In this document: in pieces, positions 7,769-51,955 of the stretch
Position numbering within the stretch: the first letter of the stretch is position 1
Layout of the letters: each line of letters opens with the position of its first letter
Assembly (NCBI GenBank): GCA_002269645.1
Contig: NIVC01000132.1
Span: 387,028-451,027, forward strand
Origin: Macrostomum lignano
Lineage: Eukaryota
Reading direction: 5' to 3'
Length of the DNA stretch: 64,000 bases
Notes under the pieces: generated by a model
Seen by the model: only the letters and a program-made list of their open reading frames with translations
Databases searched by the model: none
Told to the model about the DNA's origin: nothing
Made by a program: the position numbers and the translations under genes

Positions 7769-7852
7769 ATGATGAAATTTCGCGAGCCCGACAGGGCCTC
7801 GGAATTAAACACGGAGCATCGAGTGACACCGGAGAGTCAATGGTCCGATAGT
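7769..7852 (+). CDS. Candidate first coding exon (MMKFREPDRASELNTEHRVTPESQWSDS)
   Basis: ATG at 7769; phase-0 donor AGT|GTAAGT at 7853; in frame with acceptor TTTCAG|7927. Could instead be 5' UTR, with the start at ATG 7945. Confidence 0.45.
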
Positions 7853-10800
7853 GTAAGTCAGGAAAATTGCACAATGAGAGTAGTGCAGACGGAAAAGCAT
7901 AGATACGAGTGCACCCTCACTTTCAGAGCCACATAGAGCACAAGATGTCCAGCGAGCTGTTTGTTGGCGAAGGTGTCGTAGCCAAAGGCATTCTGCACGG
8001 ACAGTAGTAAGTAGATTTGTTATACTTGTTTGTTGTTTTACTTTTCAAGCCACTTTTTCTTACACACTCCATAGAAACCGCTAGACCGTAGCAGTCAATG
8101 CCCACTGTTTTCTTTTCAGCCTCAATGTCACCCTCTCAGCCGAAAACTGGCAGTTAGAATCTATAAACATTAGCTTGAGCAGCAACGGCCAGTTTGAGAT
8201 CAGTTATCGAAGCAAAGGCAAGCAGACAGACAGGCGCGGAAGACTCAGCGAAGTGATTGTAACGCCGTACTCATTTGTCATCAAAGTTGCCGTGCAACCG
8301 CTCGGCTACGATGTGAGTTAGCCAAAATGATTTCATAGCTATCTATATGATATGTTTTTCAAAATTATTTTGACATCTATTTACGCCAGAAAAGACAGAA
8401 AAATGCGTTTGATGTCTATCTTAACCTGTAATACGAGCGTAATACTGTAACTACTGAGTAGCGTCCGAATCACACTAAATCAAGAACACAAACTTATTTT
8501 TAGCGCAAGTCTTACCCTATTGGTTTGAGCCTCAAACAACCAATGTTTAGCTGTTTGTTTGATTTTTTGCGATTTCACCACAGGAAATTGTCACTACCAG
8601 CGATTGGGGACAGGTATAAATAGTCGTAGAATTAATTGAACCATTGACGGAACAGTCATGAAATAATTTTCTGGCTTTGAGTTGAGTACTCAAACCTGAG
8701 GGAAGATTGAAGTTTCATCAAGAGTAATGCTGCTTTCACAATCAAGCGATTTCGGTCTGGTTCTGCTTCAGCAGGTTGGCACGTTCGAAAAAAAATATTG
8801 TGGCATTCCCAGATGTAAACCTGACAGTTTCGAACGCTTCACCCGGTCCCGTTCGGGGAAAAGTCCTAAACTGGACAGGAACCGTTTCATTGTGAATGCA
8901 GACTAACTGTTGTGGACAGTGGGTGAACAATCACATCAAGGACCACTAGAAATTACTGTATGGACCTCTGTAGATTCTCGGAATAAACCGGAGCAGATAC
9001 AAGTACCTGATGTACTTCGCCGAATAAAGTGTTACAATACGTTGCAATTGCAATATTGATACGATAAATCTGGCTTCAAAATATTCTAATCAAAGAGACG
9101 ATCATTTGAATCAGCAAGTAGTCTGAGAGCGCACCATAGAAATGTGATTAATTTTTTAGATAAGCCTACAAGAAAAGCACCTGGCGGAGCTCAGCCACAA
9201 CGGGAACTACTCGGCAATCTGCACCGTTATACTGGGCGGAGAGGCCGACTTCACCGAGCTGGAGATTTGCGACTCCGAAGAGCCAAAAGTTGCCACAGAA
9301 CCGGAGAACCCGTATTTGAATGTCCAACTCGGTGAGCTTCTGCCATGCTGTTATCAATTTTAATAATCTTCACGCTTAACGTATAGACAATTCTATGCGC
9401 CAAATTACAGTACATTCGGCAAGGCAACTCGGCACGCCGAGTCACGTCAAGCGACTCCGCCTCTCACTGCCTAGAGTTGAGAACTCAATCTGGAAGCCGA
9501 TCCCCATTTTCAGCGAAGAAAGCGAATGCGAACTCAAAAATGACGATAGACTGAACCACGAAATCTCGCATGGCAGTGTTCAAACGATGCCGAAATCGGA
9601 TCTTGATGCCGAGAATGCAAGGCTACGACGATGTCAACGTAGGAACGCAGACACGGCCTACATCAAACCAAGCTCAAACTTCAGCAGCGTGGTAGAATTT
9701 GAGCCGGTAGATTCGAAAACTTCCATTGAGCCGAAATTTTCAACAGCTTTGTACAAACGAGACACGCATCAAACAGTTAACGTTAATGAAGCCAACGCGA
9801 AAGCTCAGGAGAACGTCAGGAAAACGTCAGCAAACAACGTAGGTAAAGACGTCATTGAGTCTGCCTGGTTGGAATTAGACGATCCAGCAAAGGAAGGGAT
9901 TGAGACAGTCATGTTGCGAACTGGCAGAGAAATCGTATCCAAAGCATATGACGACGACAACAAGATTGAAACTGGTGTAGAAACATCCCTCATCAAGAAT
10001 TTTCAAAGAAAAAACGAAACTATGAGTATCCAAATCGGCACCTATGAATGTCTCGCAGTGACAGTTGACGAGCGTCCAAGCAAAGAAGAAATACGATTAT
10101 TTAAATATGAGCAGCAACGCAGTAAATCCCCAAAACTTAGGCGAAAACATAAAAGCCATCTCAGCCACAGCAGAACCCTATCATCGATCAAATCTATGAT
10201 GAAATTCTCAAAACTTCATCAATTACAGCAAAAACGACCCCAAAACAAAGACGACAAATCCAGTGGATTGCCATCGACAACGCTATTGAATCACACCGAA
10301 GACACCACGTCTATTCGAAAGCAGCAGCAAGGCACTGATGCTGAGCAGCGCGATGAGTCCATTGGAGCAGAAGTCGACGACATAAAGAGCTTGGTGATGC
10401 ACCTCGACCAGGACGTCGATGAGGTCCGGATCGAGTACGAGGACCAACAGGTTTCGATGGAATTGCCGGAGCCTCCGATCCGAGAGCTTCGTCACGAAAG
10501 CCAGTCAGCCGATCTCGCTGAAGAGACCGAGGAAAGCGTGCTTGCTCGAAAGCTGCAGCAGGGTACTGATGCTGAGCAGCGCGATGAGTCCATTGGAGCA
10601 GAAGTCGACGACAAAAATAGCTTGGTGATGCACCTCGACCAGGACGTCGATGAGGTCCGAATCGAGTACGAGGACCAACAGATTTCGATGGAATTGCCGG
10701 AGCCTCCGATCCGAGAGCTTCGTCACGAAAGCCAGTCAGCCGATCTCGCTGAAGAGACCGAGGAAAGCGTGCTTGCTCGAAAGCTGCAGCAGGGTACTGA

Positions 10801-13800
10801 TGCTGAGCAGCGCGATGAGTCCATTGGTGCAGAAGTCGACGACATAAAGAACTTGGTGAAGCACCTCGACCAGGACGTCGATGAGGTCCGGATCGAGTAC
10901 GAGGACCAACAGATTTCGATGGAATTGCCGGAGCCCATCATCCACGAGCCTCGCCGCTACGGGCACTCGTTTGATCGCGATAGTCAAATTTCCAAGGAGA
11001 GCGATCGATCCTGGCAGTCAGACGATCTCCTGCATCATATTAGGGACGCACCCGTCGACGAAAGAAACGAGAGTAGGTCGATAGATCTGGCTGAGCCAAA
11101 GTCATCAAAAATAGTAAAACGCTTGTCTTTGGGAAGTGCAGAGTTTCCGCCCATCGAATCAAAAGTAAGGCTGCGACACACATCTGGTGAGAGCTCGGCA
11201 AAGAGAGAAAAACCTCAGACGAGACCCCACAGTGTAAGTGTGACTGGAACGCACGACGATAAAAGTCAGAGCTCTGGTTCTCAAAGCTCGATGCCACTCG
11301 AGTCATCATACCCACCAAAGCACAAAAAGAACGTGTTCGGAAAGTTCCTGGGTGTTTTTAAGCGACACAGAGGATCGTATAATGTCTCCGACTTGGACAC
11401 AGCTGGAAACGCGGAAAACGAGGCGAGCTTCCGTAGGAAGCAATCAAGTCAACTAGCACAGAGAAATGACAGCGAGACTAACGAAACACAAGTGCCGTCA
11501 ATGTCAAGAGACCCAGATACAGTTAGTCAAACCAAAAGTAGCGAACAGGACAACCAGGAGCAAGTCGGAAGTAGCAGTGCAGCAACAAAAGAAGCTTTGA
11601 CACAGGATCAGCAACTATCAATCGAAATTTCGGAGCCTTCGATCCGAGAGCTTCGTCACGAAAGCCAGTCAGCCGATCTCGCTGAAGAGACCGAGGAAAG
11701 CGTGCTTGCTCGAAAGCTGCAGCAGGGTACTGATGCTGAGCAGCGCGATGAGTCCATTGGAGCAGAAGTCGACGACATAAAGAGCTTGGTGATGCACCTC
11801 GACCAGGACGTCGATGAGGTCCGGATCGAGTACGAGGACCAACAGGTTTCGATGGAATTGCCGGAGCCTCCGATCCGAGAGCTTCGTCACGAAAGCCAGT
11901 CAGCCGATCTCGCTGAAGAGACCGAGGAAAGCGTGCTTGCTCGAAAGCTGCAGCAGGGTACTGATGCTGAGCAGCGCGATGAGTCCATTGGAGCAGAAGT
12001 CGACGACATAAATAGCTTGGTGATGCACCTCGACCAGGACGTCGATGAGGTCCGAATCGAGTACGAGGACCAACAGATTTCGATGGAATTGCCGGAGCCT
12101 CCGATCCGAGAGCTTCGTCACGAAAGCCAGTCAGCCGATCTCGCTGAAGAGACCGAGGAAAGCGTGCTTGCTCGAAAGCTGCAGCAGGGTACTGATGCTG
12201 AGCAGCGCGATGAGTCCATTGGTGCAGAAGTCGACGACATAAAGAACTTGGTGAAGCACCTCGACCAGGACGTCGATGAGGTCCGGATCGAGTACGAGGA
12301 CCAACAGATTTCGATGGAATTGCCGGAGCCCATCATCCACGAGCCTCGCCGCTACGGGCACTCGTTTGATCGCGATAGTCAAATTTCCAAGGAGAGCGAT
12401 CGATCCTGGCAGTCAGACGATCTCCTGCATCATATTAGGGACGCACCCGTCGACGAAAGAAACGAGAGTAGGTCGATAGATCTGGCTGAGCCAAAGTCAT
12501 CAAAAATAGTAAAACGCTTGTCTTTGGGAAGTGCAGAGTTTCCGCCCATCGAATCAAAAGTAAGGCTGCGACACACATCTGGTGAGAGCTCGGCAAAGAG
12601 AGAAAAACCTCAGACGAGACCCCACAGTGTAAGTGTGACTGGAACGCACGACGATAAAAGTCAGAGCTCTGGTTCTCAAAGCTCGATGCCACTCGAGTCA
12701 TCATACCCACCAAAGCACAAAAAGAACGTGTTCGGAAAGTTCCTGGGTGTTTTTAAGCGACACAGAGGATCGTATAATGTCTCCGACTTGGACACAGCTG
12801 GAAACGCGGAAAACGAGGCGAGCTTCCGTAGGAAGCAATCAAGTCAACTAGCACAGAGAAATGACAGCGAGACTAACGAAACACAAGTGCCGTCAATGTC
12901 AAGAGACCCAGATACAGTTAGTCAAACCAAAAGTAGCGAACAGGACAACCAGGAGCAAGTCGGAAGTAGCAGTGCAGCAACAAAAGAAGCTTCGACACAG
13001 GATCAGCAACTGTCAATCGAAATTTCGGAGCCTTCGATCCGAGAGCTTCGTCACGAAAGCCAGTCAGCCGATCTCGCTGAAGAGACCGAGGAAAGCGTGC
13101 TTGCTCGAAAGCTGCAGCAGGGTACTGATGCTGAGCAGCGCGATGAGTCCATTGGAGCAGAAGTCGACGACATAAAGAGCTTGGTGATGCACCTCGACCA
13201 GGACGTCGATGAGGTCCGGATCGAGTACGAGGACCAACAGGTTTCGATGGAATTGCCGGAGCCTCCGATCCGAGAGCTTCGTCACGAAAGCCAGTCAGCC
13301 GATCTCGCTGAAGAGACCGAGGAAAGCGTGCTTGCTCGAAAGCTGCAGCAGGGTACTGATGCTGAGCAGCGCGATGAGTCCATTGGAGCAGAAGTCGACG
13401 ACATAAATAGCTTGGTGATGCACCTCGACCAGGACGTCGATGAGGTCCGAATCGAGTACGAGGACCAACAGATTTCGATGGAATTGCCGGAGCCTCCGAT
13501 CCGAGAGCTTCGTCACGAAAGCCAGTCAGCCGATCTCGCTGAAGAGACCGAGGAAAGCGTGCTTGCTCGAAAGCTGCAGCAGGGTACTGATGCTGAGCAG
13601 CGCGATGAGTCCATTGGTGCAGAAGTCGACGACATAAAGAACTTGGTGAAGCACCTCGACCAGGACGTCGATGAGGTCCGGATCGAGTACGAGGACCAAC
13701 AGATTTCGATGGAATTGCCGGAGCCCATCATCCACGAGCCTCGCCGCTACGGGCACTCGTTTGATCGCGATAGTCAAATTTCCAAGGAGAGCGATCGATC

Positions 13801-16800
13801 CTGGCAGTCAGACGATCTCCTGCATCATATTAGGGACGCACCCGTCGACGAAAGAAACGAGAGTAGGTCGATAGATCTGGCTGAGCCAAAGTCATCAAAA
13901 ATAGTAAAACGCTTGTCTTTGGGAAGTGCAGAGTTTCCGCCCATCGAATCAAAAGTAAGGCTGCGACACACATCTGGTGAGAGCTCGGCAAAGAGAGAAA
14001 AACCTCAGACGAGACCCCACAGTGTAAGTGTGACTGGAACGCACGACGATAAAAGTCAGAGCTCTGGTTCTCAAAGCTCGATGCCACTCGAGTCATCATA
14101 CCCACCAAAGCACAAAAAGAACGTGTTCGGAAAGTTCCTGGGTGTTTTTAAGCGACACAGAGGATCGTATAATGTCTCCGACTTGGACACAGCTGGAAAC
14201 GCGGAAAACGAGGCGAGCTTCCGTAGGAAGCAATCAAGTCAACTAGCACAGAGAAATGACAGCGAGACTAACGAAACACAAGTGCCGTCAATGTCAAGAG
14301 ACCCAGATACAGTTAGTCAAACCAAAAGTAGCGAACAGGACAACCAGGAGCAAGTCGGAAGTAGCAGTGCAGCAACAAAAGAAGCTTCGACACAGGATCA
14401 GCAACTATCAATCGAAATTTCGGAGCCTTCGATCCGAGAGCTTCGTCACGAAAGCCAGTCAGCCGATCTCGCTGAAGAGACCGAGGAAAGCGTGCTTGCT
14501 CGAAAGCTGCAGCAGGGTACTGATGCTGAGCAGCGCGATGAGTCCATTGGAGCAGAAGTCGACGACATAAAGAGCTTGGTGATGCACCTCGACCAGGACG
14601 TCGATGAGGTCCGGATCGAGTACGAGGACCAACAGGTTTCGATGGAATTGCCGGAGCCTCCGATCCGAGAGCTTCGTCACGAAAGCCAGTCAGCCGATCT
14701 CGCTGAAGAGACCGAGGAAAGCGTGCTTGCTCGAAAGCTGCAGCAGGGTACTGATGCTGAGCAGCGCGATGAGTCCATTGGAGCAGAAGTCGACGACATA
14801 AATAGCTTGGTGATGCACCTCGACCAGGACGTCGATGAGGTCCGAATCGAGTACGAGGACCAACAGATTTCGATGGAATTGCCGGAGCCTCCGATCCGAG
14901 AGCTTCGTCACGAAAGCCAGTCAGCCGATCTCGCTGAAGAGACCGAGGAAAGCGTGCTTGCTCGAAAGCTGCAGCAGGGTACTGATGCTGAGCAGCGCGA
15001 TGAGTCCATTGGTGCAGAAGTCGACGACATAAAGAACTTGGTGAAGCACCTCGACCAGGACGTCGATGAGGTCCGGATCGAGTACGAGGACCAACAGATT
15101 TCGATGGAATTGCCGGAGCCCATCATCCACGAGCCTCGCCGCTACGGGCACTCGTTTGATCGCGATAGTCAAATTTCCAAGGAGAGCGATCGATCCTGGC
15201 AGTCAGACGATCTCCTGCATCATATTAGGGACGCACCCGTCGACGAAAGAAACGAGAGTAGGTCGATAGATCTGGCTGAGCCAAAGTCATCAAAAATAGT
15301 AAAACGCTTGTCTTTGGGAAGTGCAGAGTTTCCGCCCATCGAATCAAAAGTAAGGCTGCGACACACATCTGGTGAGAGCTCGGCAAAGAGAGAAAAACCT
15401 CAGACGAGACCCCACAGTGTAAGTGTGACTGGAACGCACGACGATAAAAGTCAGAGCTCTGGTTCTCAAAGCTCGATGCCACTCGAGTCATCATACCCAC
15501 CAAAGCACAAAAAGAACGTGTTCGGAAAGTTCCTGGGTGTTTTTAAGCGACACAGAGGATCGTATAATGTCTCCGACTTGGACACAGCTGGAAACGCGGA
15601 AAACGAGGCGAGCTTCCGTAGGAAGCAATCAAGTCAACTAGCACAGAGAAATGACAGCGAGACTAACGAAACACAAGTGCCGTCAATGTCAAGAGACCCA
15701 GATACAGTTAGTCAAACCAAAAGTAGCGAACAGGACAACCAGGAGCAAGTCGGAAGTAGCAGTGCAGCAACAAAAGAAGCTTCGACACAGGATCAGCAAC
15801 TGTCAATCGAAATTTCGGAGCCTTCGATCCGAGAGCTTCGTCACGAAAGCCAGTCAGCCGATCTCGCTGAAGAGACCGAGGAAAGCGTGCTTGCTCGAAA
15901 GCTGCAGCAGGGTACTGATGCTGAGCAGCGCGATGAGTCCATTGGAGCAGAAGTCGACGACATAAAGAGCTTGGTGATGCACCTCGACCAGGACGTCGAT
16001 GAGGTCCGGATCGAGTACGAGGACCAACAGGTTTCGATGGAATTGCCGGAGCCTCCGATCCGAGAGCTTCGTCACGAAAGCCAGTCAGCCGATCTCGCTG
16101 AAGAGACCGAGGAAAGCGTGCTTGCTCGAAAGCTGCAGCAGGGTACTGATGCTGAGCAGCGCGATGAGTCCATTGGAGCAGAAGTCGACGACATAAATAG
16201 CTTGGTGATGCACCTCGACCAGGACGTCGATGAGGTCCGAATCGAGTACGAGGACCAACAGATTTCGATGGAATTGCCGGAGCCTCCGATCCGAGAGCTT
16301 CGTCACGAAAGCCAGTCAGCCGATCTCGCTGAAGAGACCGAGGAAAGCGTGCTTGCTCGAAAGCTGCAGCAGGGTACTGATGCTGAGCAGCGCGATGAGT
16401 CCATTGGTGCAGAAGTCGACGACATAAAGAACTTGGTGAAGCACCTCGACCAGGACGTCGATGAGGTCCGGATCGAGTACGAGGACCAACAGATTTCGAT
16501 GGAATTGCCGGAGCCCATCATCCACGAGCCTCGCCGCTACGGGCACTCGTTTGATCGCGATAGTCAAATTTCCAAGGAGAGCGATCGATCCTGGCAGTCA
16601 GACGATCTCCTGCATCATATTAGGGACGCACCCGTCGACGAAAGAAACGAGAGTAGGTCGATAGATCTGGCTGAGCCAAAGTCATCAAAAATAGTAAAAC
16701 GCTTGTCTTTGGGAAGTGCAGAGTTTCCGCCCATCGAATCAAAAGTAAGGCTGCGACACACATCTGGTGAGAGCTCGGCAAAGAGAGAAAAACCTCAGAC

Positions 16801-43800: not shown

Positions 43801-46800
43801 CATTGGATCAAAATCACAGTTTGTCTGTACACACTGTCACTCAGGGAGGCTTTCAGCCAGAACACATTGAATCAGAAGAAGAAAAAACGTGCTTTAAAGA
43901 TGCTCACAGCGAGGATAAGCCGTTTGACTCAAATACTAACAGTAGCGTGGTAGATACTGTTTCACCCTCGAGTACTGTCTCTCACTACTACGACAACCAG
44001 CCTTCACGCAAGTCGTACAGCTTAGAAGAATCGAATTCGCCACGTTCCAACAACGAAAATTTGCGGGATTCTTCACCTCTAAGCAACGATAGCAAACTCT
44101 CGAATGATAAGGCACTTGTCCAAACCGAGGTTCAACAAGCAGAGCTTAAACAAGAGCAAGCAGAAAATTCTTCAGATCCTGAATTGAATGCAATTGAGAT
44201 AAGTGCCGCTACAACTGCGCATGAAATCAGTTTGCCAAAAGTGCTCGATGGAACCCCAACACTGGTGCGCCAAGAGTGTGAATCCAGAGAATCGCTCCAG
44301 TCAGTAATCGAGTCTGCCAGTTCTGCAGCAGAAGGCGCCGACACAGGCACTCGTGGCCAGTTGGATGATGTTGTCCAGCAGCCGGGTCGCCTGTCTGCCA
44401 GTGAGGACGAGGACAGCGAGGCGGACAATGACGAGCCTCCGTACTTCTTTGATGGCGGCAGTGTAAGCTTTTTTTAATCTACTAAATTATTTTTGTTTCA
44501 GTATGCATCGTCTCTTTTGGGGGGGGGGGGGCGTAGCCCAGCGGTCTAGCGCAGGCTCTGGTGTGCCAGCGACCCAGGCTCGATTCCAAGTGCAGTCACA
44601 TTAATTTGGGGCTAAATTGGAATCTCGGCTTGGCTCTGCTCGTGCAATTAACGGCCTTGAGAGCCAACCCCCCAAGGCGCAGTGAAGTGTACATGCCTAA
44701 CGATAATATAAAGTTAGGGCCGCTGTACACTCCTGTGTGAGTGTGTGCCTGCGTACGTATCCGCGCTTGTATGCCTGCTCAGGGGAGTCGGCGGAATGGG
44801 CAGTAATGCCTCTCGCCGGTTGTGTGTTGATGTCGCTTAAAGTGCGCCAGGGTGCACACAACCCATTTGCCTCTAATAAAAAATGCGTTACCTTAAATGT
44901 GCCTCGCAAGGGCGCCTATAGTAAATGATTTAGTATATTCGAAGATATTGAGAAGCAATAGTTTCAAAGGGTGAATAAGATTTTCCCGCTGAGGTTTACG
45001 AAGGAAATATACTACGATATTTTTATTTAGATGATGAGATGAGATTTAGTTGATGAGACAAACTAATGGGAAAAATATCGTCGGAAAAAATTCTTTGCAT
45101 GAAATTTTAATGCTCCAGCTTTAAAGCAATGCCTCTAAAAGCGATTTTCTTGTAACTCCTTCATAGATTGCCGCTAATCAGACCAACGCTACGCTCAATT
45201 CCAAATGGACCGAGCAGAGCAAATTACGGGATGGCCGCAGTCCGGAGCCGATCGGTCCAAACACGCATGTCGAAGAAGCAGACCACCATGCCATAATGTC
45301 CAACGGCACTGATGTTATGATTTCGACACTAGCCAAGATGCCTGGAGCGAATCAGAAGCCATCCAGGGCTCAAGACGCTGCCAAGTTCGGAGTATTTCGA
45401 TACAGTTCCTATAACTTGCAAGGCGCCAGCGGATTTGTGAAAGGTGACCGTCTGGCCTCCGGTTGCAGCAGCGAAACTGACGGCAGCAGCAGCGACGACA
45501 GCAGCAGCTGTAGCGAAGATTCGTTCAAACAGCGACTGGCTAAGAAGTTCTCAGCTGAGCCAGCATCGTTAAGGTTGAGTAGGCGGCAAGTCAACTGGAA
45601 AAAGCCCTCTGGAGACCACTGGCAAAGCGAGGCGTTTAACAGCCCGAGCGGGGACGGGCCTCGAGCCGGCTCAGACAGAGAGCTCAGCAATTCTCTGCAA
45701 TTCGGCGACGGCAGCCATGGGGACACTCTGGAGTTCCAGCTGACGAACGAATCTGCCATTGAAGATTTGGAGCGGCGAAAAAATGCCAAAGGATTCTCAA
45801 CTCTGAAGCCGGTAAGAGTTCTTTTAGATAGGAAATCGAGGGATAGCAAGGATGTAACCTAAATGGGATATCTCGGGATAGGAAATCGAGGGATAGCAAG
45901 GATGTAACCTAAATGGGATATCTCGGGATAGGAAATCGAGGGAGAACAATGATGTGACCTAGATCGAATGTCTCGGAATAGGAAATCGAGGGAGAACAAG
46001 GATGTGACCTAGATGGAATATCTCAGAATAGGAAATCGAGGGAGAACAAGGATGTGACCTAGATCTAGGTGGAATGTCTCCGAATTTTTTTTCAACCAGT
46101 CCGACAAGTTGTCGATAACAGTCGGTTCGGTATGGAGCTTTACTTTGGGCTGCATTCCGGCGAATAAGTTGAAAGCTCCTTTACCTGTGATATTCTACAG
46201 GTGACATGAAGCTATATATATATTTTTGAACTATACAGATAATTCCATTCCGAGCGCGACTCCCAGTGCAAATACGGTATGGACACAGCATTGTGATTTA
46301 CGGCCGAATGACCAACTACTCTTCAGCTGGGTGAGACTAACTGTTAAAATGTATCTTTAAATATAGTTTTTCATGCGCTGAACAAGCGTTTAAAATATTG
46401 GTAAAAATCACACTGCTGCTCTTCAGGCTTAAATTGTCTTTGGAAAATCTCGATTACTCGCCCGGTGCCCAGGCCTTCGAGTTGCTGATTTCCTTCCCTG
46501 GCGGAGCCGACCAGCCGTCGCTGATGCACACCTGCCAGCTAATTGGGGGGCAACCCGTCTGCGAGGCGAAGGCGCTGCTGTCACCAAAGCAGAACGACGA
46601 GTTTCGTCTGGTGATTTGTTTCAAGCGACTGGGACTCAGCGTAAGATTTCTAACCTTACTTCTTGGGCATCTGACGAGTAGCCGCAGACCAGAACAGCTG
46701 GGAGTTTGAAGAGGATTTAATGAGGAGTCCACCGTTTTTTTCATCCAACTCTTGTTTAATTCGAAAGGCGACGAAAAGTTGTTTGCAATCTGGAAGGATC

Positions 46801-49800
46801 TGTCTTGGCATTGAGTTGGCGTAGGTTTAACCTGACGAACTATTTTTTTCAACCGGTTTTCAGACGGCTCTCGCCGACACGGAATGCGTGTTACCGCATC
46901 ACATTCCGGTGTCCGACTTCACTCACCTGGTGCTGCACCCCGACTGCGAGTACACTAGCGTGGAGTTTCACGAACGCCTGGAGCTGCCGCTACGCGAACA
47001 CCTGGCCTGCCCGCTCAGCCTGGTTGAATCTGTGCGGCTCGGCCTTCGGCCGGACAGCAGCTCCACCGGCCTCCTGTTCGGCCTGGCCGACGGCGCGGCC
47101 ATGACCTGCTCGCTCAGCATCGCCAGCCTGACAGCTACGGTAGGTCGAGCCGATCCGGACGACACTTGCAGCAGCAACGGCGGCGACGACGGTGGCGGCT
47201 TCGTCAAGGAGATGGAGAAACGCGGTTTAAACCAGCTGGCGAAACTGCGCAGCGTTTTGCTGACAATTCACGGCCAGGTGGTTCGGGTGAGTTTCTCAGG
47301 GGTGCTGCAGCCAATTAAGGCGAAAATGGAGTCGCAGCTAACAGGAAGGCAGAAGTACGAGTATAGCCCTGGAATTCTCCTTGTAGGGCATGTACAGGCA
47401 TGTGGGTAGTTTAATGTTTCAGGTTTCTTAAGTAGTCTTTAGGTCAGACTGTTTTTCCACTCTGATACCTGCTAATCCACCGCGTCTAATAATAGAACTA
47501 GACAACATAGATCAGACCATTTTAATGTACTTGCATAGGCAATTAAAGTAGAAGGACACGAAACTTTATTTTCCTAGAAATGGGCTGGAGGCTGCGTTGA
47601 ATCCAGCAACGCCATAGACACTTGTGCGCGTGATCTAGGCGTTGCTGAATTTAGCACACTCGTGCGCCACCCATTATCCCGAGTTCCGACCTTCGTCTAA
47701 CCACCCATTTGTCGCTCGGAAGTACCATAGACAAAACCATTATCCAGAACTCAAGGACTAAATGCTGCCGTATTGGAGAAGTATGGGGGAAACTGTACGC
47801 CTACATTTTCTGGAAGTACAGTACATTTTGTAATTTATAGTATATGTGCCAATAGGAATTATTGACTGATCGGTGTTCGTTTATTGTGTCTGAAATGCAT
47901 TAATAATGAGTTTCAATTAGGCAGATTTCTCGTTAACTCCGAATTCAGATTCATATTAATGGCGAGTACATAATGACGTACTTGATGAAGTTGGATGCTA
48001 GAAGAGTGAAGAGCCTGTACATTGAAGGCGATCTAATGCTGGAGGATTTCAAAATCAAGGAGATGGTGAGAGTTTGAAATTATAAAATTTTGTTTTAAGA
48101 AAGCACATGCCTAATTGCAATTAACAATTTTTAACAAAAAATCTCTCATATCTTGCCATATCTCGTCCAATCAGAGCTCACTACCTCACCCATAGCCCTG
48201 CCCGATGAATCGTGTCTGCTATCCGCTCAGCCAATCGGAGCTCACTACCTCACCCATAGCCCTGCCCGATGAATCGTGTCTGCTATCCGCTCAGCCAATC
48301 GGAGCTCACTACCTCACCCATAGCCCTGCCCGATGAATCGTGTCTGCTATCCGCTCAGCCAATCGGAACTTACTACCTCGCCCCATCATTCCCTCCAGCG
48401 AGCCAATCCACTGACGGCTCTTCCCAAGCAGCTGCCAGTAGGCGGCCAGATTCGAATCTGGGCCCGGTTGCTGCCGTCGGCCGCTTCGATGCCGGCCGGC
48501 AACAACTGTCGAATTTCGCTTCGAACCGGCGCTGACCCGAGCTCAGCGGACTTTGCCCTCCTTGCCCGGGTGGCGCCCAGCAGAGAATCGGACAGCGGCG
48601 CCGTCGGCTGTCTGGCCCTCAGCGCCATCGTCAACGGTCAGCAGAGCGACGAAGCAGTGGACGCCACCAGCCGCAGCGACGCAAAAGATAGGGACGGCTT
48701 CGCCTTCGAGACGACGATCGTCCGACGCTTGAAGGACTTCTACGTAGTGTTGGACAGCGGGCACAACGCCAGCCTGCGCCACCGGATCGACCCGGACCTG
48801 GTGACTCATCTGCACCTGGCTGGCGCCGCCACCGCCTTTCTGTTTGTCAGCTTCCCAGCCAGCCTGTGGCTTCCCTACACCAATCGCCTGCCGCCGATGG
48901 ATCCGAGTCGGCCGGGCCGGTTGATCCGTCTCGGTCTGTCGGACGGGGCCGACCTGGCCGAGACCGACGGGGGCAACTACGGAGCGTAAGTGTCGATTAG
49001 GCCCAGGGTCCAGATTTCAGTATCCCATGCAGTTTGGCCTTTTTACAGAAAATCTTAAGATGAAAGAGACATCAGGTTTGGAAGAGATATGGAAGCAACG
49101 ACCAAGCAAACCCGGTACAGTTTAACTTGGTGTTTCAAGCCGTTTTCCACTGATGAAGTAGGGCGCTACCTCAAAAAGTCGAATTAGATAGTCTACGCTA
49201 CTTATCAAGTAGTATGACGCATGTCTTACACGTGTATGTTATTTTAATGTTTAATAAAAATGAGGGCAAAGTAGATCAGCGGTTAACGCGTCTGTCTGAT
49301 TCTGCAGCGCAGAAGTGCCCGGGTTCGATTCCGTGCGCGGCTTGAGACATGCAACTGCGCCCATCAGCTTAGCTTCTTTCGATGGGAAACGTTCTCATTT
49401 TCTTGAGAATTTCCAATTTGCAGCAGCCGCACCGTTTCGCTGGCCATCGGCGCCGATCCGGACGGCGTCAAGCCGCTGATCTGCGAGTTCTGCCTGACCG
49501 ACAGCGGCCAGCAGGCGGCCCTGGCCTGGATGAACGACGCCCGCCAGACTCGAGTGGCTGAGCTGTGCCCGGTGCCGCTGTTTAGCGAGATTCGAACCAT
49601 CGACCTACTGCTGGCGGATAACGGCGATTGCAAAGTGAGTGGCAAAGCAAAAAGTTGATTTCCCTGTCCGATCGTTGATTTCCCTGTCCGATAGTTGATT
49701 TCCCTGTCCAAATGTTGATTTCCCTGTCCGATAGTTGCTTACCCTGTCCGATAGTTGATTTCCCTGTCCGATAGTTGATTTCCCTGTCCGATAGTTGATT

Positions 49801-51874
49801 TCCCTGTCCGATAGTTGATTTCCCTGTCCGATCGTTGATTTCCCTGTCCGATCGTTGATTTCCCTGTCCAAATGTTGATTTCCCTGTCCGATAGTTGCTT
49901 ACCCTGTCCGATAGTTGATTTCCCTGTCCGATAGTTGATTTCCCTGTCCGATAGTTGATTTCCCTGTCCGATCGTTGATTTCCCTGTCCGATAGTTGATT
50001 TCCCTGTCCGATCGTTGATTTCCCTGTCCGATCGTTGATTTCCCTGTCCAAATGTTGATTTCCCTGTCCGATAGTTGCTTACCCTGTCCGATAGTTGATT
50101 TCCCTGTCCGATAGTTGATTTCCCTGTCCGATCGTTGATTTCCCTGTCCGATCGTTGATTTCCCTGTCCGATAGTTGCTTATCCTGTCCGATAGTTGATT
50201 TCCCTGTCCGATAGTTGATTTCCCTGTCCGATAGTTGATTTCCCTGTCCGATAGTTGATTTCCCTGTCCGATAGTTGATTTCCCTGTCCGATAGTTGATT
50301 TCCCTGTCCGATAGTTGATTTCCCTGTCCGATAGTTGATTTCCCTGTCCGATAGTTGATTTCCCTGTCCGATAGTTGCTTATCCTGTCCGATAGTTGATT
50401 TCCCTGTCCAATAGTTGCTTACCCTGTCCGATAGTTGCTTATCCTGTCCGATAGTTGCTTATCCTGTCCGATCGTTGCTTACCATGTCCGATAGTTGATT
50501 TCCCTGTCCGATAGTTGCTTATCCTGTCCGATCGTTGCTTACCCTGTCCGATAGTTGCTTATCCTGTCCGATAGTTGATTTCCCTGTCCGATAGTTGCTT
50601 ATCCTGTCCGATAGTTGATTTCCCTGTCCAATAGTTGCTTACCCTGTCCGATAGTTGCTTATCCTGTCCGATAGTTGCTTATCCTGTCCGATCGTTGCTT
50701 ACCATTTCCGATAGTTGATTTCCCTGTCCAATAGTTGCTTACCCTGTCCGATAGTTGCTTATCCTGTCCGATAGTTGCTTATCCTGTCCGATCGTTGCTT
50801 ACCATTTCCGATAGTTGATTTCCCTGTCCGATAGTTGCTTATCCTGTCCGATCGTTGCTTACCCTGTCCGATAGTTGCTTATCCTGTCCGATAGTTGATT
50901 TCCCTGTCCGATAGTTGCTCATCCTGTCCGATAGTTGATTTCCCTGTCCAATAGTTGCTTATCCTGTCCGATAGTTGATTTCCCCGTCCAATAGTTGCTT
51001 ACCCTGTCCGATAGTTGATTTCCCTGTCCAATAGTTGCTTACCCTGTCCGATAGTTGCTTATCCTGTCCGATCGTTGCTTACCATGTCCGATAGTTGATT
51101 TCCCTGTCCGATAGTTGCTTATCCTGTCCGATAGTTGCTTATCCTGTCCGATAGTTGATTTCCCTGTCCGATAGTTGATTTCCCTGTCCGATAGTTGCTC
51201 ATCCTGTCCGATAGTTGATTTCCCTGTCCGATAGTTGCTTATCCTGTCCGATAGTTGCTTATCCTGTCCGATAGTTGATTTCCCTGTCCGATAGTTGATT
51301 TCCCTGTCCGATAGTTGCTTATCCTGTCCGATAGTTGATTTCCCTGTCCGATAGTTGATTTCCCTGTCCGATAGTTGATACTTCAATTGCAAGCCTCAAT
51401 TTAACATTCCAAGCCTCATTCTAACATTCCAAGCCTCAATCTAACATTCCAAGCCTCAATTTAACATTTCAAGCCTCATTCTAACATTCCAAGCCTCAAT
51501 CTAACATTTCAAGCCTCATTCTAACATTCCAAGCCTCAATCTAACATTCCAAGCCTCAGTAAAACACTGTGCTCTGGTTGTTAGTTCAGAGCACAGATTG
51601 TGATCACAGTTTAAGAAGCCGCTACATTGCAGCTTGTAGTCAACAAGCGAATAGTCTCCAGCTACAGAGCTGACATCTCTCCTAAGGACGCCAGATGGAT
51701 AGTCATCACTGGCAATATCAGTCTGCTCAATGTTGAATTGGAAAATCAGGTAATTATTTAACTATCTATTTTTGATTGTATTTAAATATAATTAAATATA
51801 AGCTACTTAAATTCGCAAAAAGGTAAAAACTCCGCAATTTTAAGGTCCCGACAAGTCGTTGTTCAGTCTCTTAG
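7769..51874 (+). CDS. Giant multi-galectin-like protein: Gal-like D1, ~11,700-aa A/B repeat spacer, Gal-like D2-D5; ~12,700 aa spliced model
   Basis: Hand-spliced join(7769..7852?,7927..8006,8120..8312,9160..9331,9411..44462,45167..45811,46239..46330,46427..46640,46864..47286,47949..48065,48399..48985,49424..49634,51633..51749,51845..51874?). All introns are GT-AG and phases match at every junction. Domains follow the galectin strand pattern, e.g. IHINGEYIMTYLMKLDARRVKSLYIEGDL and FETTIVRRLKDFYVVLDSGHNASLRHRIDPDLVTHLHLAG. Confidence 0.75.
7927..8006 (+). CDS. Exon, start of galectin-like D1 (SHIEHKMSSELFVGEGVVAKGILHGQ+TA)
   Basis: Acceptor tttcag; ATG at 7945; phase-2 donor TA|GTAAGT at 8007; TA+C gives Tyr with the next exon. 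Confidence 0.7.
8120..8312 (+). CDS. Exon, core of galectin-like D1 (LNVTLSAENW...PYSFVIKVAVQPLGYD)
   Basis: Acceptor ttttcttttcag; open frame of 1+192 nt; phase-0 donor GAT|GTGAGT. Confidence 0.78.
9160..9331 (+). CDS. Exon, end of galectin-like D1 (ISLQEKHLAELSHNGNYSAICTVILGGEADFTELEI...) plus linker
   Basis: Acceptor tttttttag; 57 codons+1; phase-1 donor G|GTGAGC. Matches the galectin v.vng.h...f.hr....i..l.i.Gd pattern. Confidence 0.78.
9411..44462 (+). CDS. Giant ~35 kb coding block: unique basic head, A/B repeat array, unique acidic Ser-rich tail; frameshifted between 24.2 and 37.5 kb in this assembly
   Basis: Acceptor aaattacag|TA gives G+TA=Val in the frame of ORF 9395..24334. The same repeats continue in ORFs 24256, 25341, 28204, 29214, 29884, 30345, 30641, 33502 and 37563..44477. 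Phase-0 donor AGT|GTAAGC at 44463. Confidence 0.75.
10320..43397 (+). repeat. Coding higher-order tandem array: 231-bp (77-aa) A module x ~83 and 696-702-bp (~234-aa) B module x 20
   Basis: ORF-track offsets of 231 and 1395 bp (=3A+B). A modules per block read: 3 (first partial), 3 x10, 9, 1, 15, 5, 5, 1, 1, 3, 4, 6. Confidence 0.95.
44528..44930 (+). mobile_element. Putative tRNA-derived SINE in intron
   Basis: Pol III A-box TAGCCCAGCGG (44534-44544) and B-box-like GGCTCGATTCC (44577-44587); no valid cloverleaf; GC-rich body; 3' end gtgcctcgcaagggcgcctatagtaaat resembles L2/CR1-type SINE tails. Confidence 0.55.
45167..45811 (+). CDS. Exon, Ser/Asp-rich linker before D2 (IAANQTNATL...KGFSTLKP)
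   Basis: Acceptor ctccttcatag; 215 open codons containing ORF 45296..45862; phase-0 donor CCG|GTAAGA. Confidence 0.75.
45827..46082. repeat. 50-bp intronic tandem repeat x5
   Basis: Unit gataggaaatcgagggatagcaaggatgtaacctaaatgggatatctcgg; two near-identical copies followed by three variant copies. Confidence 0.9.
46239..46330 (+). CDS. Exon, start of galectin-like D2 (IIPFRARLPVQIRYGHSIVIYGRMTNYSSA)
   Basis: Acceptor ctatacag; galectin vPy...l..g...G..i.i.G pattern; phase-2 donor GG|GTGAGA. Confidence 0.78.
46427..46640 (+). CDS. Exon, core of D2 (LKLSLEN...SPKQNDEFRLVICFKRLGLS)
   Basis: Acceptor ctcttcag; 1+213 nt; phase-0 donor AGC|GTAAGA. Confidence 0.8.
46864..47286 (+). CDS. Exon, end of D2 (VLPHHIPVSDFTHLVLHPDCEYTSVEF) and most of D3
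   Basis: Acceptor ggttttcag; 141 codons; phase-0 donor CGG|GTGAGT. Confidence 0.8.
47949..48065 (+). CDS. Exon, end of D3 (IHINGEYIMTYLMKLDARRVKSLYIEGDLMLEDFKIKEM)
   Basis: Acceptor gaattcag; 39 codons; donor ATG|GTGAGA; clear galectin C-terminal v.vNG...i..l.i.GD motif. Confidence 0.85.
48170..48385. repeat. 64-bp intronic tandem repeat, x3 plus partial
   Basis: Unit gagctcactacctcacccatagccctgcccgatgaatcgtgtctgctatccgctcagccaatcg; ORFs 48269 and 48333 start identically, 64 bp apart. Confidence 0.92.
48399..48985 (+). CDS. Exon, complete galectin-like D4 and start of D5
   Basis: Acceptor cattccctccag; lies within ORF 48333..48989 (LPKQLPVGGQIRIW...ADFALLARV...FETTIV...LRHRIDPDLVTHLHLAG...LPYTNRLP); phase-2 donor GC|GTAAGT. 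Confidence 0.85.
49268..49345 (+). mobile_element. tRNA-derived SINE head or tRNA pseudogene fragment
   Basis: A-box TAGATCAGCGG (49272-49282) and perfect B-box GGTTCGATTCC (49322-49332); the anticodon arm and acceptor stem are not canonical. Confidence 0.45.
49424..49634 (+). CDS. Exon, core of D5 (SRTVSLAIGADP...IRTIDLLLADNGDCK)
   Basis: Acceptor tttgcag (tandem CAGCAG, alternative start 49427); 1+210 nt; phase-0 donor AAA|GTGAGT. Confidence 0.78.
49653..51379. repeat. 20-bp satellite, ~86 copies (GATAGTTGATTTCCCTGTCC and variants)
   Basis: Strict 20-bp period; variants ..GCTTATCCTG.., ..GCTTACCCTG.., GATCG.., AAATG..; no spacers. Confidence 0.98.
51391..51558. repeat. Second 20-bp tandem repeat, ~8 copies (AAGCCTCAATCTAACATTCC)
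   Basis: Direct 20-bp period immediately after the first satellite. Confidence 0.95.
51633..51749 (+). CDS. Exon, end of D5 (LVVNKRIVSSYRADISPKDARWIVITGNISLLNVELENQ)
   Basis: Acceptor acattgcag; 39 codons, the same length as the D3 terminal exon; donor CAG|GTAATT. Confidence 0.8.
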
Positions 51875-51955
51875 CCAGAGCCTCGAGCAGAACGATCCGA
51901 CTACCTTTTGCGGCATCTGCTGTCAGATGATTCAAAACAGGGCGAAACAACTTGA
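51845..51955 (+). CDS. Candidate terminal exon: VPTSRCSVS* (51845-51874), or PEPRAERS...QGETT* via acceptor 51875
   Basis: Two phase-0 acceptors (tttaag at 51844, ctcttag at 51874); AATAAA at 52241. The choice is unresolved. Confidence 0.4.

What the first reader, a model, noticed from the sequence alone, without database searches (positions are those of the whole stretch)
7769..51874. Hidden giant gene: five galectin-fold domains split 1+4 around a ~11,700-aa repeat spacer (~1.4 MDa)
Seen: 13-14 exons with GT-AG sites and matching phases join small, unannotated exons at 7.9-9.3 kb and 45-52 kb to the repeat ORFs. The small exons translate to five beta-sandwich units with the galectin pattern (vPy..l..gl..G..i.i.G / F.inL / Fel.I.v...f.v.vNG.h...f.HR....i..L.i.GD). 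No signal peptide or TM helix is evident. Knowledge: galectins normally carry 1-2 CRDs with short linkers, four-CRD forms are known in bivalves, and they are made in the cytosol. I know of no galectin with a titin/AHNAK-scale spacer. Inference: a bipolar tether or molecular ruler linking targets over hundreds of nm, or a non-classically exported matrix/adhesive polymer.
Basis: partly seen in the sequence, partly recalled or inferred. Interest (0 to 1): 0.95.

Follow-up and report, generated by a model that had tools for sequence, protein, structure and literature searches.

The report
Giant flatworm gene with galectin-like ends
This stretch of the flatworm Macrostomum lignano genome very probably holds one enormous gene (about 12,700 amino acids): a long acidic repeat region followed by four degenerate galectin-type domains, and probably preceded by a fifth; public databases hold only fragments of it and its function is unknown.

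Summary
The window is Macrostomum lignano (assembly Mlig_3_7, contig NIVC01000183.1). All introns are GT-AG and all phases match.

The nine 3' junctions are validated. They give exactly the tail of UniProt A0A1I8J927. They are also colinear, with 5 substitutions in 811 aa, with the NCBI model PAA89866.1 of a sister copy, whose record annotation is described as transcriptome-based. That model reads from about 2,300 aa of repeats into the galectin exons.

The four C-terminal domains are galectin-family. Pfam PF00337 scores 38.5 bits, and a profile of the domains hits only galectins in the PDB. An AlphaFold2 model of one domain matches galectin-8N (TM 0.71-0.79). They lack the canonical sugar-binding residues.

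The N-terminal domain is probable only. Its link to the repeat exon (9331|9411) is inferred from sequence alone.

The 35-kb repeat exon is broken by about 18 one-base indels. The same kind of lesion recurs in the sister copy, so these are most likely assembly errors, not introns or pseudogenisation.

"Unannotated" is overstated, because the 3' part is already named "Galectin domain-containing protein". The proposed tether function is untested.

The parts
7769..7852 (+). Exon 1 with the predicted start codon (MMKFREPDRAS...); phase 0 donor GTAAGT
   Evidence: Best splice/codon path. First ATG after an in-frame stop. Donor in the 96.5th percentile. No independent transcript evidence.
7927..8006 (+). 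Exon 2. Alternative start at ATG 7945. Begins the N-terminal galectin-like domain (SELFVGEGVVAKGILHGQ)
   Evidence: GC 0.53 against 0.37-0.45 in the flanking introns.
8120..8312 (+). Exon 3, the middle of the N-terminal galectin-like domain
   Evidence: Acceptor in the 100th percentile and donor GTGAGT in the 98.6th.
9160..9331 (+). Exon 4, the C-terminal strands of the N-terminal galectin-like domain (…HLAELSHNGNYSAICTVILGGEADFTELEI…). Donor GTGAGC, phase 1
   Evidence: Pfam PF00337 profile positions 82-130, 12.4 bits, E 0.11. hhalign P 0.0025. Best non-training hit of a galectin HMM among 1,186 window ORF segments, E 0.006 for the spliced domain.
9411..44462 (+). Giant exon of 35,052 nt: 300 aa of unique basic sequence, then the repeat array 10315-43402 (about 78 acidic 77-aa A units and about 20 Ser/Lys/Arg-rich 234-aa B units; super-repeat AAAB of 1,395 bp), then 353 aa of unique acidic sequence
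   Evidence: NCBI partial protein PAA88545.1 maps to about 31393-32982. The end of the exon is contained in UniProt A0A1I8J927.
24193..37484 (+). About 18 frame-breaking one-base indels inside the repeat exon. Positions: 24193, 25299, 27825, 27859, 28991, 29000, 29005, 29053, 29147, 29150, 29224, 29732, 29864, 30319, 30611, 33496, 37484, plus a garbled patch at 28104-28142. Most are in runs of 2-4 identical bases. Read as assembly errors
   Evidence: Alignment of each copy to the consensus unit and the frame path. The sister copy L003 carries the same kind of lesion, twice in the same sequence context.
45167..45811 (+). Exon 6: a Ser-rich linker with the basic motif AAKFGVFRYSSY and an acidic Ser cluster
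   Evidence: Junction 44462|45167 is present in A0A1I8J927 and PAA89866.1.
46239..46974 (+). Galectin-like domain a, spliced from 46239-46330, 46427-46640 and 46864-46974
   Evidence: Identical to A0A1I8J927. HMM exon hits. Aligns with domain 1 of the paralogue.
46975..48065 (+). Galectin-like domain b, spliced from 46975-47286 and 47949-48065
   Evidence: Pfam PF00337 16.6 bits alone. Junction 47286|47949 is in A0A1I8J927 and PAA89866.1.
48399..48869 (+). Galectin-like domain d, within a single exon
   Evidence: Pfam 16.1 bits, profile positions 4-123. AlphaFold2 pLDDT 82.3 and pTM 0.80 with a 10-row alignment. Foldseek best hit galectin-8 N-CRD, E 3.7e-9, TM 0.71/0.77.
48870..51749 (+). Galectin-like domain e, spliced from 48870-48985, 49424-49634 and 51633-51749
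   Evidence: Identical to A0A1I8J927. Colinear with domain 4 of the paralogue.
51845..51874 (+). Last exon (VPTSRCSVS, stop TAG at 51872-51874) as in the sister-copy NCBI model. The UniProt model uses 51879-51959 instead

Best explanation
One very large protein-coding gene of Macrostomum lignano spans 7769-51874 on the + strand. It belongs to the same gene family as the NCBI loci Mlig001996 and Mlig005900. It has 14 exons and a CDS of about 38 kb, giving about 12,670 aa (about 1.4 MDa).

Shown. A single 35-kb exon encodes a tandem array of acidic 77-aa units (pI 4.1, net charge -16 each), interspersed every third unit with a 234-aa Ser/Lys/Arg-rich unit. That exon is spliced to eight small exons encoding four tandem galectin-fold domains, plus a short terminal exon. 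These domains lack the canonical beta-galactoside-binding residues. They are conserved relative to the spacer between genomic copies, and they are colinear with a 31%-identical paralogue.

Inferred.
(a) The frame breaks in the repeat exon are consensus errors of the PacBio-based assembly, so the real product is continuous.
(b) Four upstream exons, encoding a fifth and more degenerate galectin-like domain, are cis-spliced to the giant exon.
(c) The protein is made in the cytoplasm, since it has no signal peptide or TM helix. It works as a long polyanionic scaffold or tether. The galectin-like folds act as end-binding modules for protein or non-canonical glycan ligands. The repeat array, with about 20 regularly spaced basic amphipathic/Ser-rich B units, sets the distance and offers periodic secondary attachment or phosphorylation sites.
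For: Gene continuity at the 3' end. The window's spliced model equals UniProt A0A1I8J927 from the last A repeat to domain e. It is colinear with NCBI PAA89866.1 (3,568 aa; repeats followed by four galectin domains) of the syntenic sister contig, with 5 substitutions in 811 aa and no gaps. PMC5730564 describes that annotation as transcriptome-based.

Coding nature.
- The first open frame runs for 4,984 codons, and open frames overlap across most breaks.
- Against the sister copy, exons are 0.57% diverged with no indels. Introns are 1.26% diverged with 8 indels (Fisher p 0.005).
- Between the two UniProt copies, the galectin module has 1 substitution in 613 aa. The repeat/acidic part upstream of junction 44462|45167 has 28 in 419 aa (p 1e-10).

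Galectin identity.
- PF00337 scores 38.5 bits against a cut-off of 22.1 on the four-domain region. The paralogue scores 98.6 bits.
- A profile of the five domains hits 38 PDB sequences, all galectins or congerins.
- phmmer gives E 2.5e-37 to a 12-CRD fish galectin.
- The AlphaFold2 model and Foldseek search support the fold.

Indels as artefacts. Nearly all are single-base losses in short runs, and 13 of 18 cluster in 27.8-30.6 kb. The sister copy has six more, two of them at the same contexts, TTAGGGACG and CCTGGGTGT. The assembly was Canu on PacBio reads polished with Pilon using short reads, which I expect to work poorly in near-identical repeats (my own inference).

5' link. The reading frame is continuous across 9331|9411. 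The donor is in the 98.8th percentile. Exon GC is 0.49-0.54 against 0.37-0.45 in the introns. The spliced N-domain is the best non-training match to the galectin HMM in the window.

No signal peptide or TM helix.
Against: No transcript, annotation or second genomic copy supports the 9331|9411 junction. The sister locus fetched does not reach the 5' end. M. lignano uses spliced-leader trans-splicing and polycistronic precursors. The acceptor at 9410 could therefore be a trans-splice site, with the N-domain exons forming a separate upstream cistron that would end at the stop at 9361.

The N-domain matches only the C-terminal half of the galectin profile and is below every curated threshold.

Copy number and exact length of the array are not trustworthy, because ten super-repeats are 99.9-100% identical.

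A test of selection on the A units had no power: 22 unique variants, 7 synonymous, p 0.17.

The AlphaFold2 alignment contained two canonical galectin rows, which may pull the model toward the galectin fold. The single-sequence model was useless (pLDDT 33).

The proposed function rests only on architecture and composition.
Confidence: 0.55

Rival explanations
1. There are two genes, or two cistrons of one precursor. The four 5' exons encode a small stand-alone galectin-like protein of about 186 aa, ending at the stop at 9361 when the 9332-9410 interval is not spliced. The giant repeat protein starts separately, either at ATG 9395 or at a downstream ATG after spliced-leader trans-splicing at 9410. 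In that case it carries galectin-like domains only at its C-terminus.
For: An in-frame stop follows 30 nt after the 9331 donor, and an ATG (9395) opens the long frame inside the putative intron. Acceptor 9411 is the weakest of the set, in the 85th percentile. M. lignano has widespread trans-splicing, and about 7% of its transcripts are polycistronic. All database models of this gene family are 5'-truncated, so none shows an N-terminal domain.
Against: Donor TCG|GTGAGC ranks in the 98.8th percentile and the phases match, which has about a 1 in 3 chance. Neither stand-alone product is in the 15-billion-protein collection by exact look-up. Only 33 nt separate the stop at 9361 from ATG 9395.
Confidence: 0.27
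2. The window's copy is a decaying duplicate and the frameshifts are real. Translation would then stop near 24.3 kb, after about 5,100 aa, and the 3' galectin module of this copy would not be made from the same reading frame.
For: The assembly as given has about 18 frame-breaking indels. M. lignano is a recent polyploid with many redundant copies. NCBI calls only a 530-aa partial protein in this copy.
Against: The only lesions are one-base indels in short runs. No nonsense substitution breaks the chain of open frames. The sister copy, which carries the 3,568-aa NCBI model, shows the same lesion type, at recurrent sequence contexts. The 3' exons of this copy are intact, have no indels against the sister copy, and are identical to a UniProt model.
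Confidence: 0.1
3. The gene is real, but the protein is an exported structural or adhesive polymer. It would resemble the giant repeat adhesives Mlig-ap1 and Mlig-ap2 of the same animal.
For: M. lignano does make secreted repeat proteins of 5,407 and 14,794 aa. From my own knowledge, galectins can leave cells without a signal peptide.
Against: There is no signal peptide, no TM segment, and none of the domain types reported for Mlig-ap1/ap2 (vWD, TIL, EGF, TSP1, C-type lectin). There is no Cys in the repeats. The composition is strongly acidic, whereas Mlig-ap1 has extremely basic KR-rich regions. Non-classical export of a 1.4-MDa chain has no precedent that I know of.
Confidence: 0.06
4. The repeat block is non-coding satellite DNA lying between unrelated genes.
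For: It is a 33-kb tandem array with very high copy identity. A long antisense ORF is also present.
Against: One frame of the 1,395-bp unit is stop-free, while the other frames are not open for more than about 107 codons. NCBI and UniProt models read from the repeats into the galectin exons. Exon 5 joins in phase at both ends.
Confidence: 0.02

Closest known systems
Tandem-repeat galectins (galectin-8, -4, -9; four-CRD bivalve galectins; a predicted fish lgals4 with at least 12 CRDs, XP_051512913.1)
   Same: Same Pfam family (PF00337). Same 11-strand beta-sandwich: the Foldseek best hits are galectin-8 N-CRD. Head-to-tail domains with short linkers that carry the '...F-P-x-x-L-x-LPY...' transition. 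No signal peptide.
   Different: The five core residues of the carbohydrate site (H, N, R, N, W) are absent from all four C-terminal domains. The module sits at the end of a chain of about 12,000 aa rather than forming a 15-36 kDa protein. Sequence identity to canonical CRDs is only 15-22%.
Galectin-related proteins without lactose binding (LGALSL/GRP, GRIFIN, galectin-10/Charcot-Leyden crystal protein). The comparison with LGALSL and GRIFIN is from my own knowledge
   Same: Galectin fold with a degraded or altered sugar site. Galectin-10 structures are among the best Foldseek matches.
   Different: Those are single-domain small proteins. Direct homology to them beyond the family level was not tested.
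M. lignano paralogue A0A1I8GPB3 / A0A1I8I464 (825 aa, N-terminally truncated model)
   Same: Colinear four-domain galectin module, 31% identity over 617 aa, E 3e-73. It is preceded by acidic and Ser-rich sequence and a similar basic motif (GGLWRLFRRSKSY against FGKFLGVFKRHRGSY). It is named 'Galectin domain-containing protein'.
   Different: Its first domain keeps W, E and R of the sugar site and scores far better in Pfam (98.6 bits). Whether it also has a giant repeat or an N-terminal domain is unknown.
AHNAK, titin and other giant intracellular repeat scaffolds (functional analogy only, from my own knowledge)
   Same: Megadalton size, a very large repeat-coding exon, small recognisable binding domains at the end(s), and no secretion signal.
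   Different: No sequence or domain relationship: Pfam finds nothing credible in the repeats. The repeats here are strongly acidic and of unknown structure.
Mlig-ap1 / Mlig-ap2, the giant adhesive proteins of the same species (PMC6410801)
   Same: Same organism. Proteins of 5,407 and 14,794 aa, with long arrays of 221-255-aa repeats in Mlig-ap2. Their transcripts were also recovered as separate, unconnected fragments.
   Different: Those proteins have vWD, TIL, EGF, TSP1, LDL and C-type lectin domains and extremely basic KR-rich regions, and they are secreted. None of these features is present here.

Membership tests
Galectin family (Pfam PF00337 Gal-bind_lectin) | Sequence match to the family profile above the curated whole-protein cut-off (22.1 bits) | tested here: met
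   The spliced four-domain C-terminal region scores 38.5 bits, E 9.3e-10. UniProt A0A1I8J927 scores 33.8 bits. Individual domains score only 12-19 bits each.
Galectin family (Pfam PF00337 Gal-bind_lectin) | Galectin beta-sandwich fold | tested here: met
   Tested for domain d only. AlphaFold2 gave pLDDT 82.3, pTM 0.80 and 11 strands. The Foldseek top 50 are all galectins, best E 3.7e-9, TM 0.71/0.77. Caveat: the 10-row alignment included two canonical CRDs. Domains a, b and e were not modelled, and the spliced N-domain could not be submitted.
Galectin family (Pfam PF00337 Gal-bind_lectin) | Conserved beta-galactoside-binding residues (H-x-N-x-R, V-x-N, W-x-x-E-x-R) | tested here: not met
   Columns aligned to a canonical CRD show 0 of 5 core residues (H, N, R, N, W) in each of domains a, b, d and e. 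Only the Glu is kept, in a and d.
Galectin family (Pfam PF00337 Gal-bind_lectin) | Binding of beta-galactosides | not testable with these tools
   Needs recombinant domains and glycan arrays or lactose-column binding.
Galectin family (Pfam PF00337 Gal-bind_lectin) | No signal peptide (synthesis in the cytosol) | tested here: met
   Charged N-terminus. The highest 19-residue hydropathy mean is 1.66, inside a beta-strand. This was a simple hydropathy scan only, not a dedicated predictor.
Galectin family: N-terminal domain (7945-9290, spliced) | Significant match to a galectin profile | tested here: inconclusive
   PF00337 gives 12.4 bits, E 0.11, on profile positions 82-130 only. phmmer against PDB sequences finds nothing. 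hhalign against the domain alignment gives P 0.0025 over 54 columns. An HMM of the C-terminal domains gives E 0.006 among 1,187 sequences, the best non-training hit.
Mlig-ap1/ap2-type flatworm adhesive proteins | vWD/TIL/EGF/TSP1/C-type lectin domains and Lys/Arg-rich repeats | tested here: not met
   Pfam finds no such domains. The repeats are acidic, with pI 4.1-4.6. The family description is from PMC6410801.
Giant intracellular repeat scaffolds (AHNAK/titin-like; functional class, not a homology family) | Continuous megadalton ORF with terminal binding modules | tested here: inconclusive
   The ORF is continuous only if about 18 one-base indels are assembly errors, which searches support. 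The C-terminal modules are shown. The N-terminal module and its link to the giant exon are inferred.

The most novel reading that the evidence does not exclude
A megadalton, non-secreted protein capped with galectin folds. One galectin-like domain at the N-terminus and four at the C-terminus would be held apart by about 11,700 residues of polyanionic repeat. The galectin folds would have been re-purposed from sugar binding to anchoring, making a bipolar tether or spacer. It would be the largest galectin-fold protein known, and the repeat number would be free to expand and contract.
Probability: 0.3. Interest if true: 0.75.

Novelty: new variant of a known kind. Interest (0 to 1): 0.55.

Why it matters
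As far as I know, galectins are treated as small soluble lectins with one or two sugar-binding domains. A chain of about 12,700 aa ending in four sugar-site-less galectin folds, and possibly starting with a fifth, would extend the known uses of that fold to the end modules of a giant scaffold.

It would also add a third megadalton repeat protein to M. lignano, a genetically tractable flatworm in which in situ hybridisation, RNAi and transgenesis are in use.

There is a practical lesson too. Public databases hold this gene only as fragments of 530, 1,166, 1,177 and 3,568 aa, because near-identical repeats defeat both assembly polishing and transcript assembly. The same is probably true of its paralogue.

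Tried and rejected
- Frame switches as introns. I checked whether the frame switches inside the repeat block could be small introns. They are one-base gaps against the consensus unit, so they are not.
- Homology search with domain d. The first word-indexed search found nothing. The exhaustive HMMER search later found the relatives.
- Spliced sequences. Later, sub-sequences of proteins already on record were accepted.
- Single-sequence AlphaFold2 of domain d. It gave pLDDT 33 and was discarded.
- First exon chains. My first automatic chain inserted spurious mini-exons: 46100-46129, 47655-47780 and an acceptor at 48324. I also considered a fifth C-terminal domain built from 47287-47948. Both were dropped once the direct 47286|47949 join proved better in Pfam and matched the database models.
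- Internal intron of the UniProt model. Inside exon 6 it uses a donor AA|GTTCGG and an acceptor ...CAAAG|C. It is absent from the NCBI model, so I treat it as a predictor artefact.
- Selection test on the A units. It was underpowered.
- Pfam hits in the repeats (GBBH-like_N, DUF211, DUF7084 and others). They are weak matches on repetitive sequence with no consistent meaning.
- tRNA-like motif near 49270-49345. Neither ARAGORN nor Rfam confirmed it.
- Literature. Full-text searches for Mlig005900, Mlig001996, the UniProt accessions, and galectin plus Macrostomum found nothing relevant. The supplements of PMC5730564 do not mention Mlig005900 or Mlig030936.
- Exact look-ups. Neither the 4,979-aa ORF nor two stand-alone N-domain products is on record.

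Full report
**Source.** The window is eukaryotic. Its flanks and introns are AT-rich (33-45% GC) and its coding parts are 45-66% GC. The ORF at 55228-56979 on the - strand is an RBR/IBR ubiquitin ligase. It is 100% identical to NCBI 'BOX15_Mlig030936g3 [Macrostomum lignano]', on contig NIVC01000183.1 of assembly GCA_002269645.1. According to PMC5730564, that assembly was made with Canu from PacBio reads and polished with Pilon using Illumina and RNA-seq reads. The paper describes its annotation as transcriptome-based, and M. lignano as having widespread spliced-leader trans-splicing and about 7% polycistronic precursors.

**The repeat block.**
- *Structure.* Positions 9380-44474 on the + strand hold a chain of long open frames. 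The array proper (10315-43402) is built from a 231-bp unit (A, 77 aa) and a roughly 700-bp unit (B, 234 aa). In the first 14 kb these are arranged as an AAAB super-repeat of 1,395 bp. Copies are 97-100% identical, and ten super-repeats are 99.9-100% identical.
- *Counts and composition.* Motif counts give 78 A and about 20 B units. A is strongly acidic: pI 4.1, 30% Asp+Glu, net charge -16. B is Ser/Thr-rich and carries a basic amphipathic stretch, KKNVFGKFLGVFKRHRGSY. Neither unit has Cys. Pfam finds nothing credible in them.

**The frame breaks are not introns.** Aligning every copy to a reference unit shows that each frame switch is a one-base gap.
- *Pattern.* There are about 15 deletions and 3 insertions, mostly in runs of 2-4 identical bases, plus one garbled 40-bp patch. 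Thirteen of the 18 lie in 27.8-30.6 kb. The order of frames along the block is what successive -1 shifts predict.
- *Sister copy.* The repeat array of a sister genomic copy (L003, see below) has six more one-base deletions. Two of them are in the same sequence contexts as in the window: TTAGGGACG and CCTGGGTGT.
- *Other lesions.* No nonsense substitution interrupts the chain of frames.
- *Reading.* Recurrent homopolymer under-calls in two copies, in a region where I expect short-read polishing to fail, point to consensus errors rather than decay. I could not prove this. It also means that the unit count, and hence the figure of 11,684 codons, is only as good as the assembly.

**Gene model.** I chained exons with a small dynamic-programming script. 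It used generic donor and acceptor weights and a codon table trained on the confident exons, with no galectin information.
Spliced to 9411, it reads MMKFREPD...NVQL|VHSARQLG... without a stop for 5,103 codons.
- *3' side.* My first automatic path contained extra mini-exons. Inspection of the galectin strand pattern suggested the direct join 47286|47949, and this raised the Pfam score.

**Independent confirmation of the 3' half.**
- *UniProt models.* An exhaustive HMMER search with the single-exon domain d (48399-48983) returned three proteins. The first, UniProt A0A1I8J927, is 1,166 aa and named 'Galectin domain-containing protein', M. lignano. It starts inside the last A unit and runs through the acidic unique region and across 44462|45167. 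It then follows exactly my exon set, except for one extra internal intron with poor splice sites and a different last exon, 51879-51959. A second copy, A0A1I8GNN0, is 1,177 aa.
- *NCBI sister-copy model.* The 90% cluster of the only NCBI protein annotated inside the window's repeats (PAA88545.1, 530 aa, partial, at about 31393-32982) also contains PAA89866.1 / A0A267GV33, 'BOX15_Mlig001996g2', 3,568 aa. This protein is encoded on contig NIVC01000133.1, at a syntenic locus that is also followed by an RBR gene. It reads through about 2,300 aa of A/B repeats, the acidic region, the whole of exon 6 and the four galectin domains. It ends VPTSRCSVS.
With it, the window's 3' model is colinear with PAA89866.1 over 811 aa, with 5 substitutions and no gaps.
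- *What this settles.* All nine 3' junctions, and the continuity of repeats with galectin exons, therefore rest on database gene models of two other copies. One of these comes from an annotation described as transcriptome-based. The full model has 14 exons and 38,017 nt, about 12,670 aa.

**Selection.**
- Against the sister copy (window 43300-49660), exons differ at 0.57% with no indels. Introns differ at 1.26% with 8 indels (Fisher p 0.005).
- Between the two UniProt copies, the repeat/acidic part upstream of junction 44462|45167 has 28 substitutions in 419 aa. The galectin module has 1 in 613 aa (p 1e-10).
- A paralogue in the same species (A0A1I8GPB3 / A0A1I8I464, 825 aa, N-terminally truncated) aligns colinearly over all four domains at 31% identity, E 3e-73.
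- The four-domain module is therefore old and constrained, while the spacer evolves fast.
- Synonymous/non-synonymous counts within the A units had no power: 22 variants.

**Are the domains galectins?**
- *Pfam.* Single domains score below the Pfam cut-off, at 12-19 bits. The spliced four-domain region scores 38.5 bits (E 9e-10, cut-off 22.1). The paralogue scores 98.6 bits.
- *Other sequence searches.* phmmer of domains d+e against PDB sequences puts galectin-8 first, at E 0.001, with the alignment crossing the domain boundary in register. A profile of all five domains hits 38 PDB sequences, every one a galectin or congerin, best E 1e-4. Domain d also matches a predicted fish lgals4 with 12 canonical CRDs at E 2.5e-37.
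- *Fold.* AlphaFold2 failed on the single sequence (pLDDT 33). With a 10-row alignment of the window's and the paralogue's domains plus two fish CRDs, it gave pLDDT 82.3, pTM 0.80 and 11 strands. The Foldseek top 50 against the PDB are all galectins, best galectin-8 N-CRD at E 3.7e-9 and TM 0.71/0.77.
- *Sugar site.* In the columns of the canonical sugar site, none of domains a, b, d or e keeps His, Asn, Arg (H-x-N-x-R), Asn (V-x-N) or Trp. Only Glu survives, in a and d.
- *Conclusion.* They are members of the family by sequence and fold, but they fail the feature that defines galectin activity.

**The N-terminal domain and its link.**
- *Galectin resemblance.* The spliced 5' product shows the strand pattern of a short galectin-like domain. 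Pfam matches only profile positions 82-130 (12.4 bits, E 0.11), and phmmer against the PDB finds nothing. hhalign against the domain alignment gives P 0.0025 over 54 columns in the right register. An HMM of the C-terminal domains ranks it first among all non-training ORF segments of the window, at E 0.006 in 1,187 sequences. Because the galectin hypothesis was specified beforehand, these per-test probabilities are meaningful, but they are not conclusive.
- *Link to the giant exon.* This rests on a good donor (98.8th percentile), a moderate acceptor (85th percentile, similar to the 90th-percentile acceptor at 45167 that the database models use), matching phase, and exon/intron GC contrast.
- *Against the link.* A stop lies 30 nt beyond the donor. 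An ATG at 9395 opens the long frame. The species trans-splices. No database model reaches the 5' end, and the sister locus I could fetch stops inside the array. I put the one-gene reading at roughly twice the two-gene reading.

**Function.** Nothing here tests function. The facts that constrain it are these:
- There is no signal peptide or TM helix.
- The spacer is huge, fast-evolving, polyanionic and Cys-free, with regularly spaced basic/Ser-rich B units.
- A motif resembling the B-unit basic stretch recurs just before the galectin module, both in this gene and in the paralogue. The BLASTP similarity of the surrounding regions is not significant, at E 0.09.
- The terminal module of four sugar-site-less galectin folds is constrained.

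The most economical reading is an intracellular scaffold or tether whose galectin folds bind proteins or non-canonical ligands. A secreted adhesive like Mlig-ap1/ap2 is unlikely, given the composition and domain content.

**Novelty.** Text searches found no description of this gene or of any comparably large galectin-domain protein. Databases, however, already carry fragments auto-named 'Galectin domain-containing protein'. What is new is the recognition that these fragments, the 530-aa partial protein, and probably a further upstream galectin-like domain belong to one gene of about 12,700 aa. I rate this as a new variant of a known kind, of moderate interest.

Noticed in passing
window 49653-51379 and 51386-51558 (inside intron 49635-51632); 48167-48383 (intron 48066-48398); 45828-46064 (intron 45812-46238): The introns of the 3' part are packed with tandem arrays: a 20-bp unit x86, a second 20-bp unit x8.6, a 64-bp unit x3.4 and a 50-bp unit x4.7. 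BLAST alignments of the 20-bp array to the sister copy L003 lie on many shifted diagonals. I did not determine whether the copy number differs.
   Followed up: partly
window 55228-56979 (- strand) and beyond: An RBR/IBR-type E3 ubiquitin ligase gene (BOX15_Mlig030936g3, 617 aa) lies tail-to-tail downstream of the giant gene. The same neighbour follows the sister copy on contig NIVC01000133.1, so the duplication covers more than one gene.
   Followed up: partly
window 47287-47405 and 47432-47862 (intron 47287-47948): The frame stays open for 40 codons past the strong donor at 47286. It reads VSFSGVLQ...YSPGILLVGHVQ, which looks like the last strands of a galectin domain. Other short ORFs in this 662-bp intron have faint galectin-like patterns (e.g. 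RLIIELDN..ILMYLH, TPTFSGSTVHFVIYSI). They could be remnants of a lost domain or alternative exons. The galectin HMM does not score them.
   Followed up: partly
window B units (e.g. within 13600-14245), exon 6 (about 45380-45420), and paralogue A0A1I8GPB3 residues about 145-170: A basic amphipathic motif followed by Ser-Tyr recurs. It is KKNVFGKFLGVFKRHRGSY in every B unit, AAKFGVFRYSSY just before the galectin module, and KRRTGGLWRLFRRSKSY in the paralogue. In each case an acidic Ser cluster follows (SSSDDSSSC / SSSSDDSC). BLASTP of the surrounding regions is not significant (E 0.09). It may be a membrane-, calmodulin- or kinase-related motif.
   Followed up: partly
window 11457-24011: Nine consecutive 1,395-bp super-repeats are 99.9-100% identical at the DNA level, five of them at 100%. 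Either the amplification is very recent or the assembler/polisher homogenised the copies. Either way the repeat number is uncertain.
   Followed up: no
window 41905-43431 (- strand) and 29768-30337 (- strand): Long antisense ORFs (508 and 189 aa) lie inside the repeat array. I take them to be by-products of a stop-free reverse frame in a repeated unit, not genes.
   Followed up: no
window 49270-49345 (intron 48986-49423): A stretch containing GGTTCGATTCC, which resembles a tRNA B-box/T-arm, caught my eye as a possible tRNA-derived SINE. ARAGORN found no tRNA, and Rfam found nothing beyond a chance-level match.
   Followed up: yes
P0004 (XP_051512913.1, Myxocyprinus asiaticus lgals4 isoform, 1,981 aa): A predicted fish galectin-4 isoform carries at least 12 canonical CRDs in tandem (PF00337, 1,369 bits, 12 stretches).
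   Followed up: no
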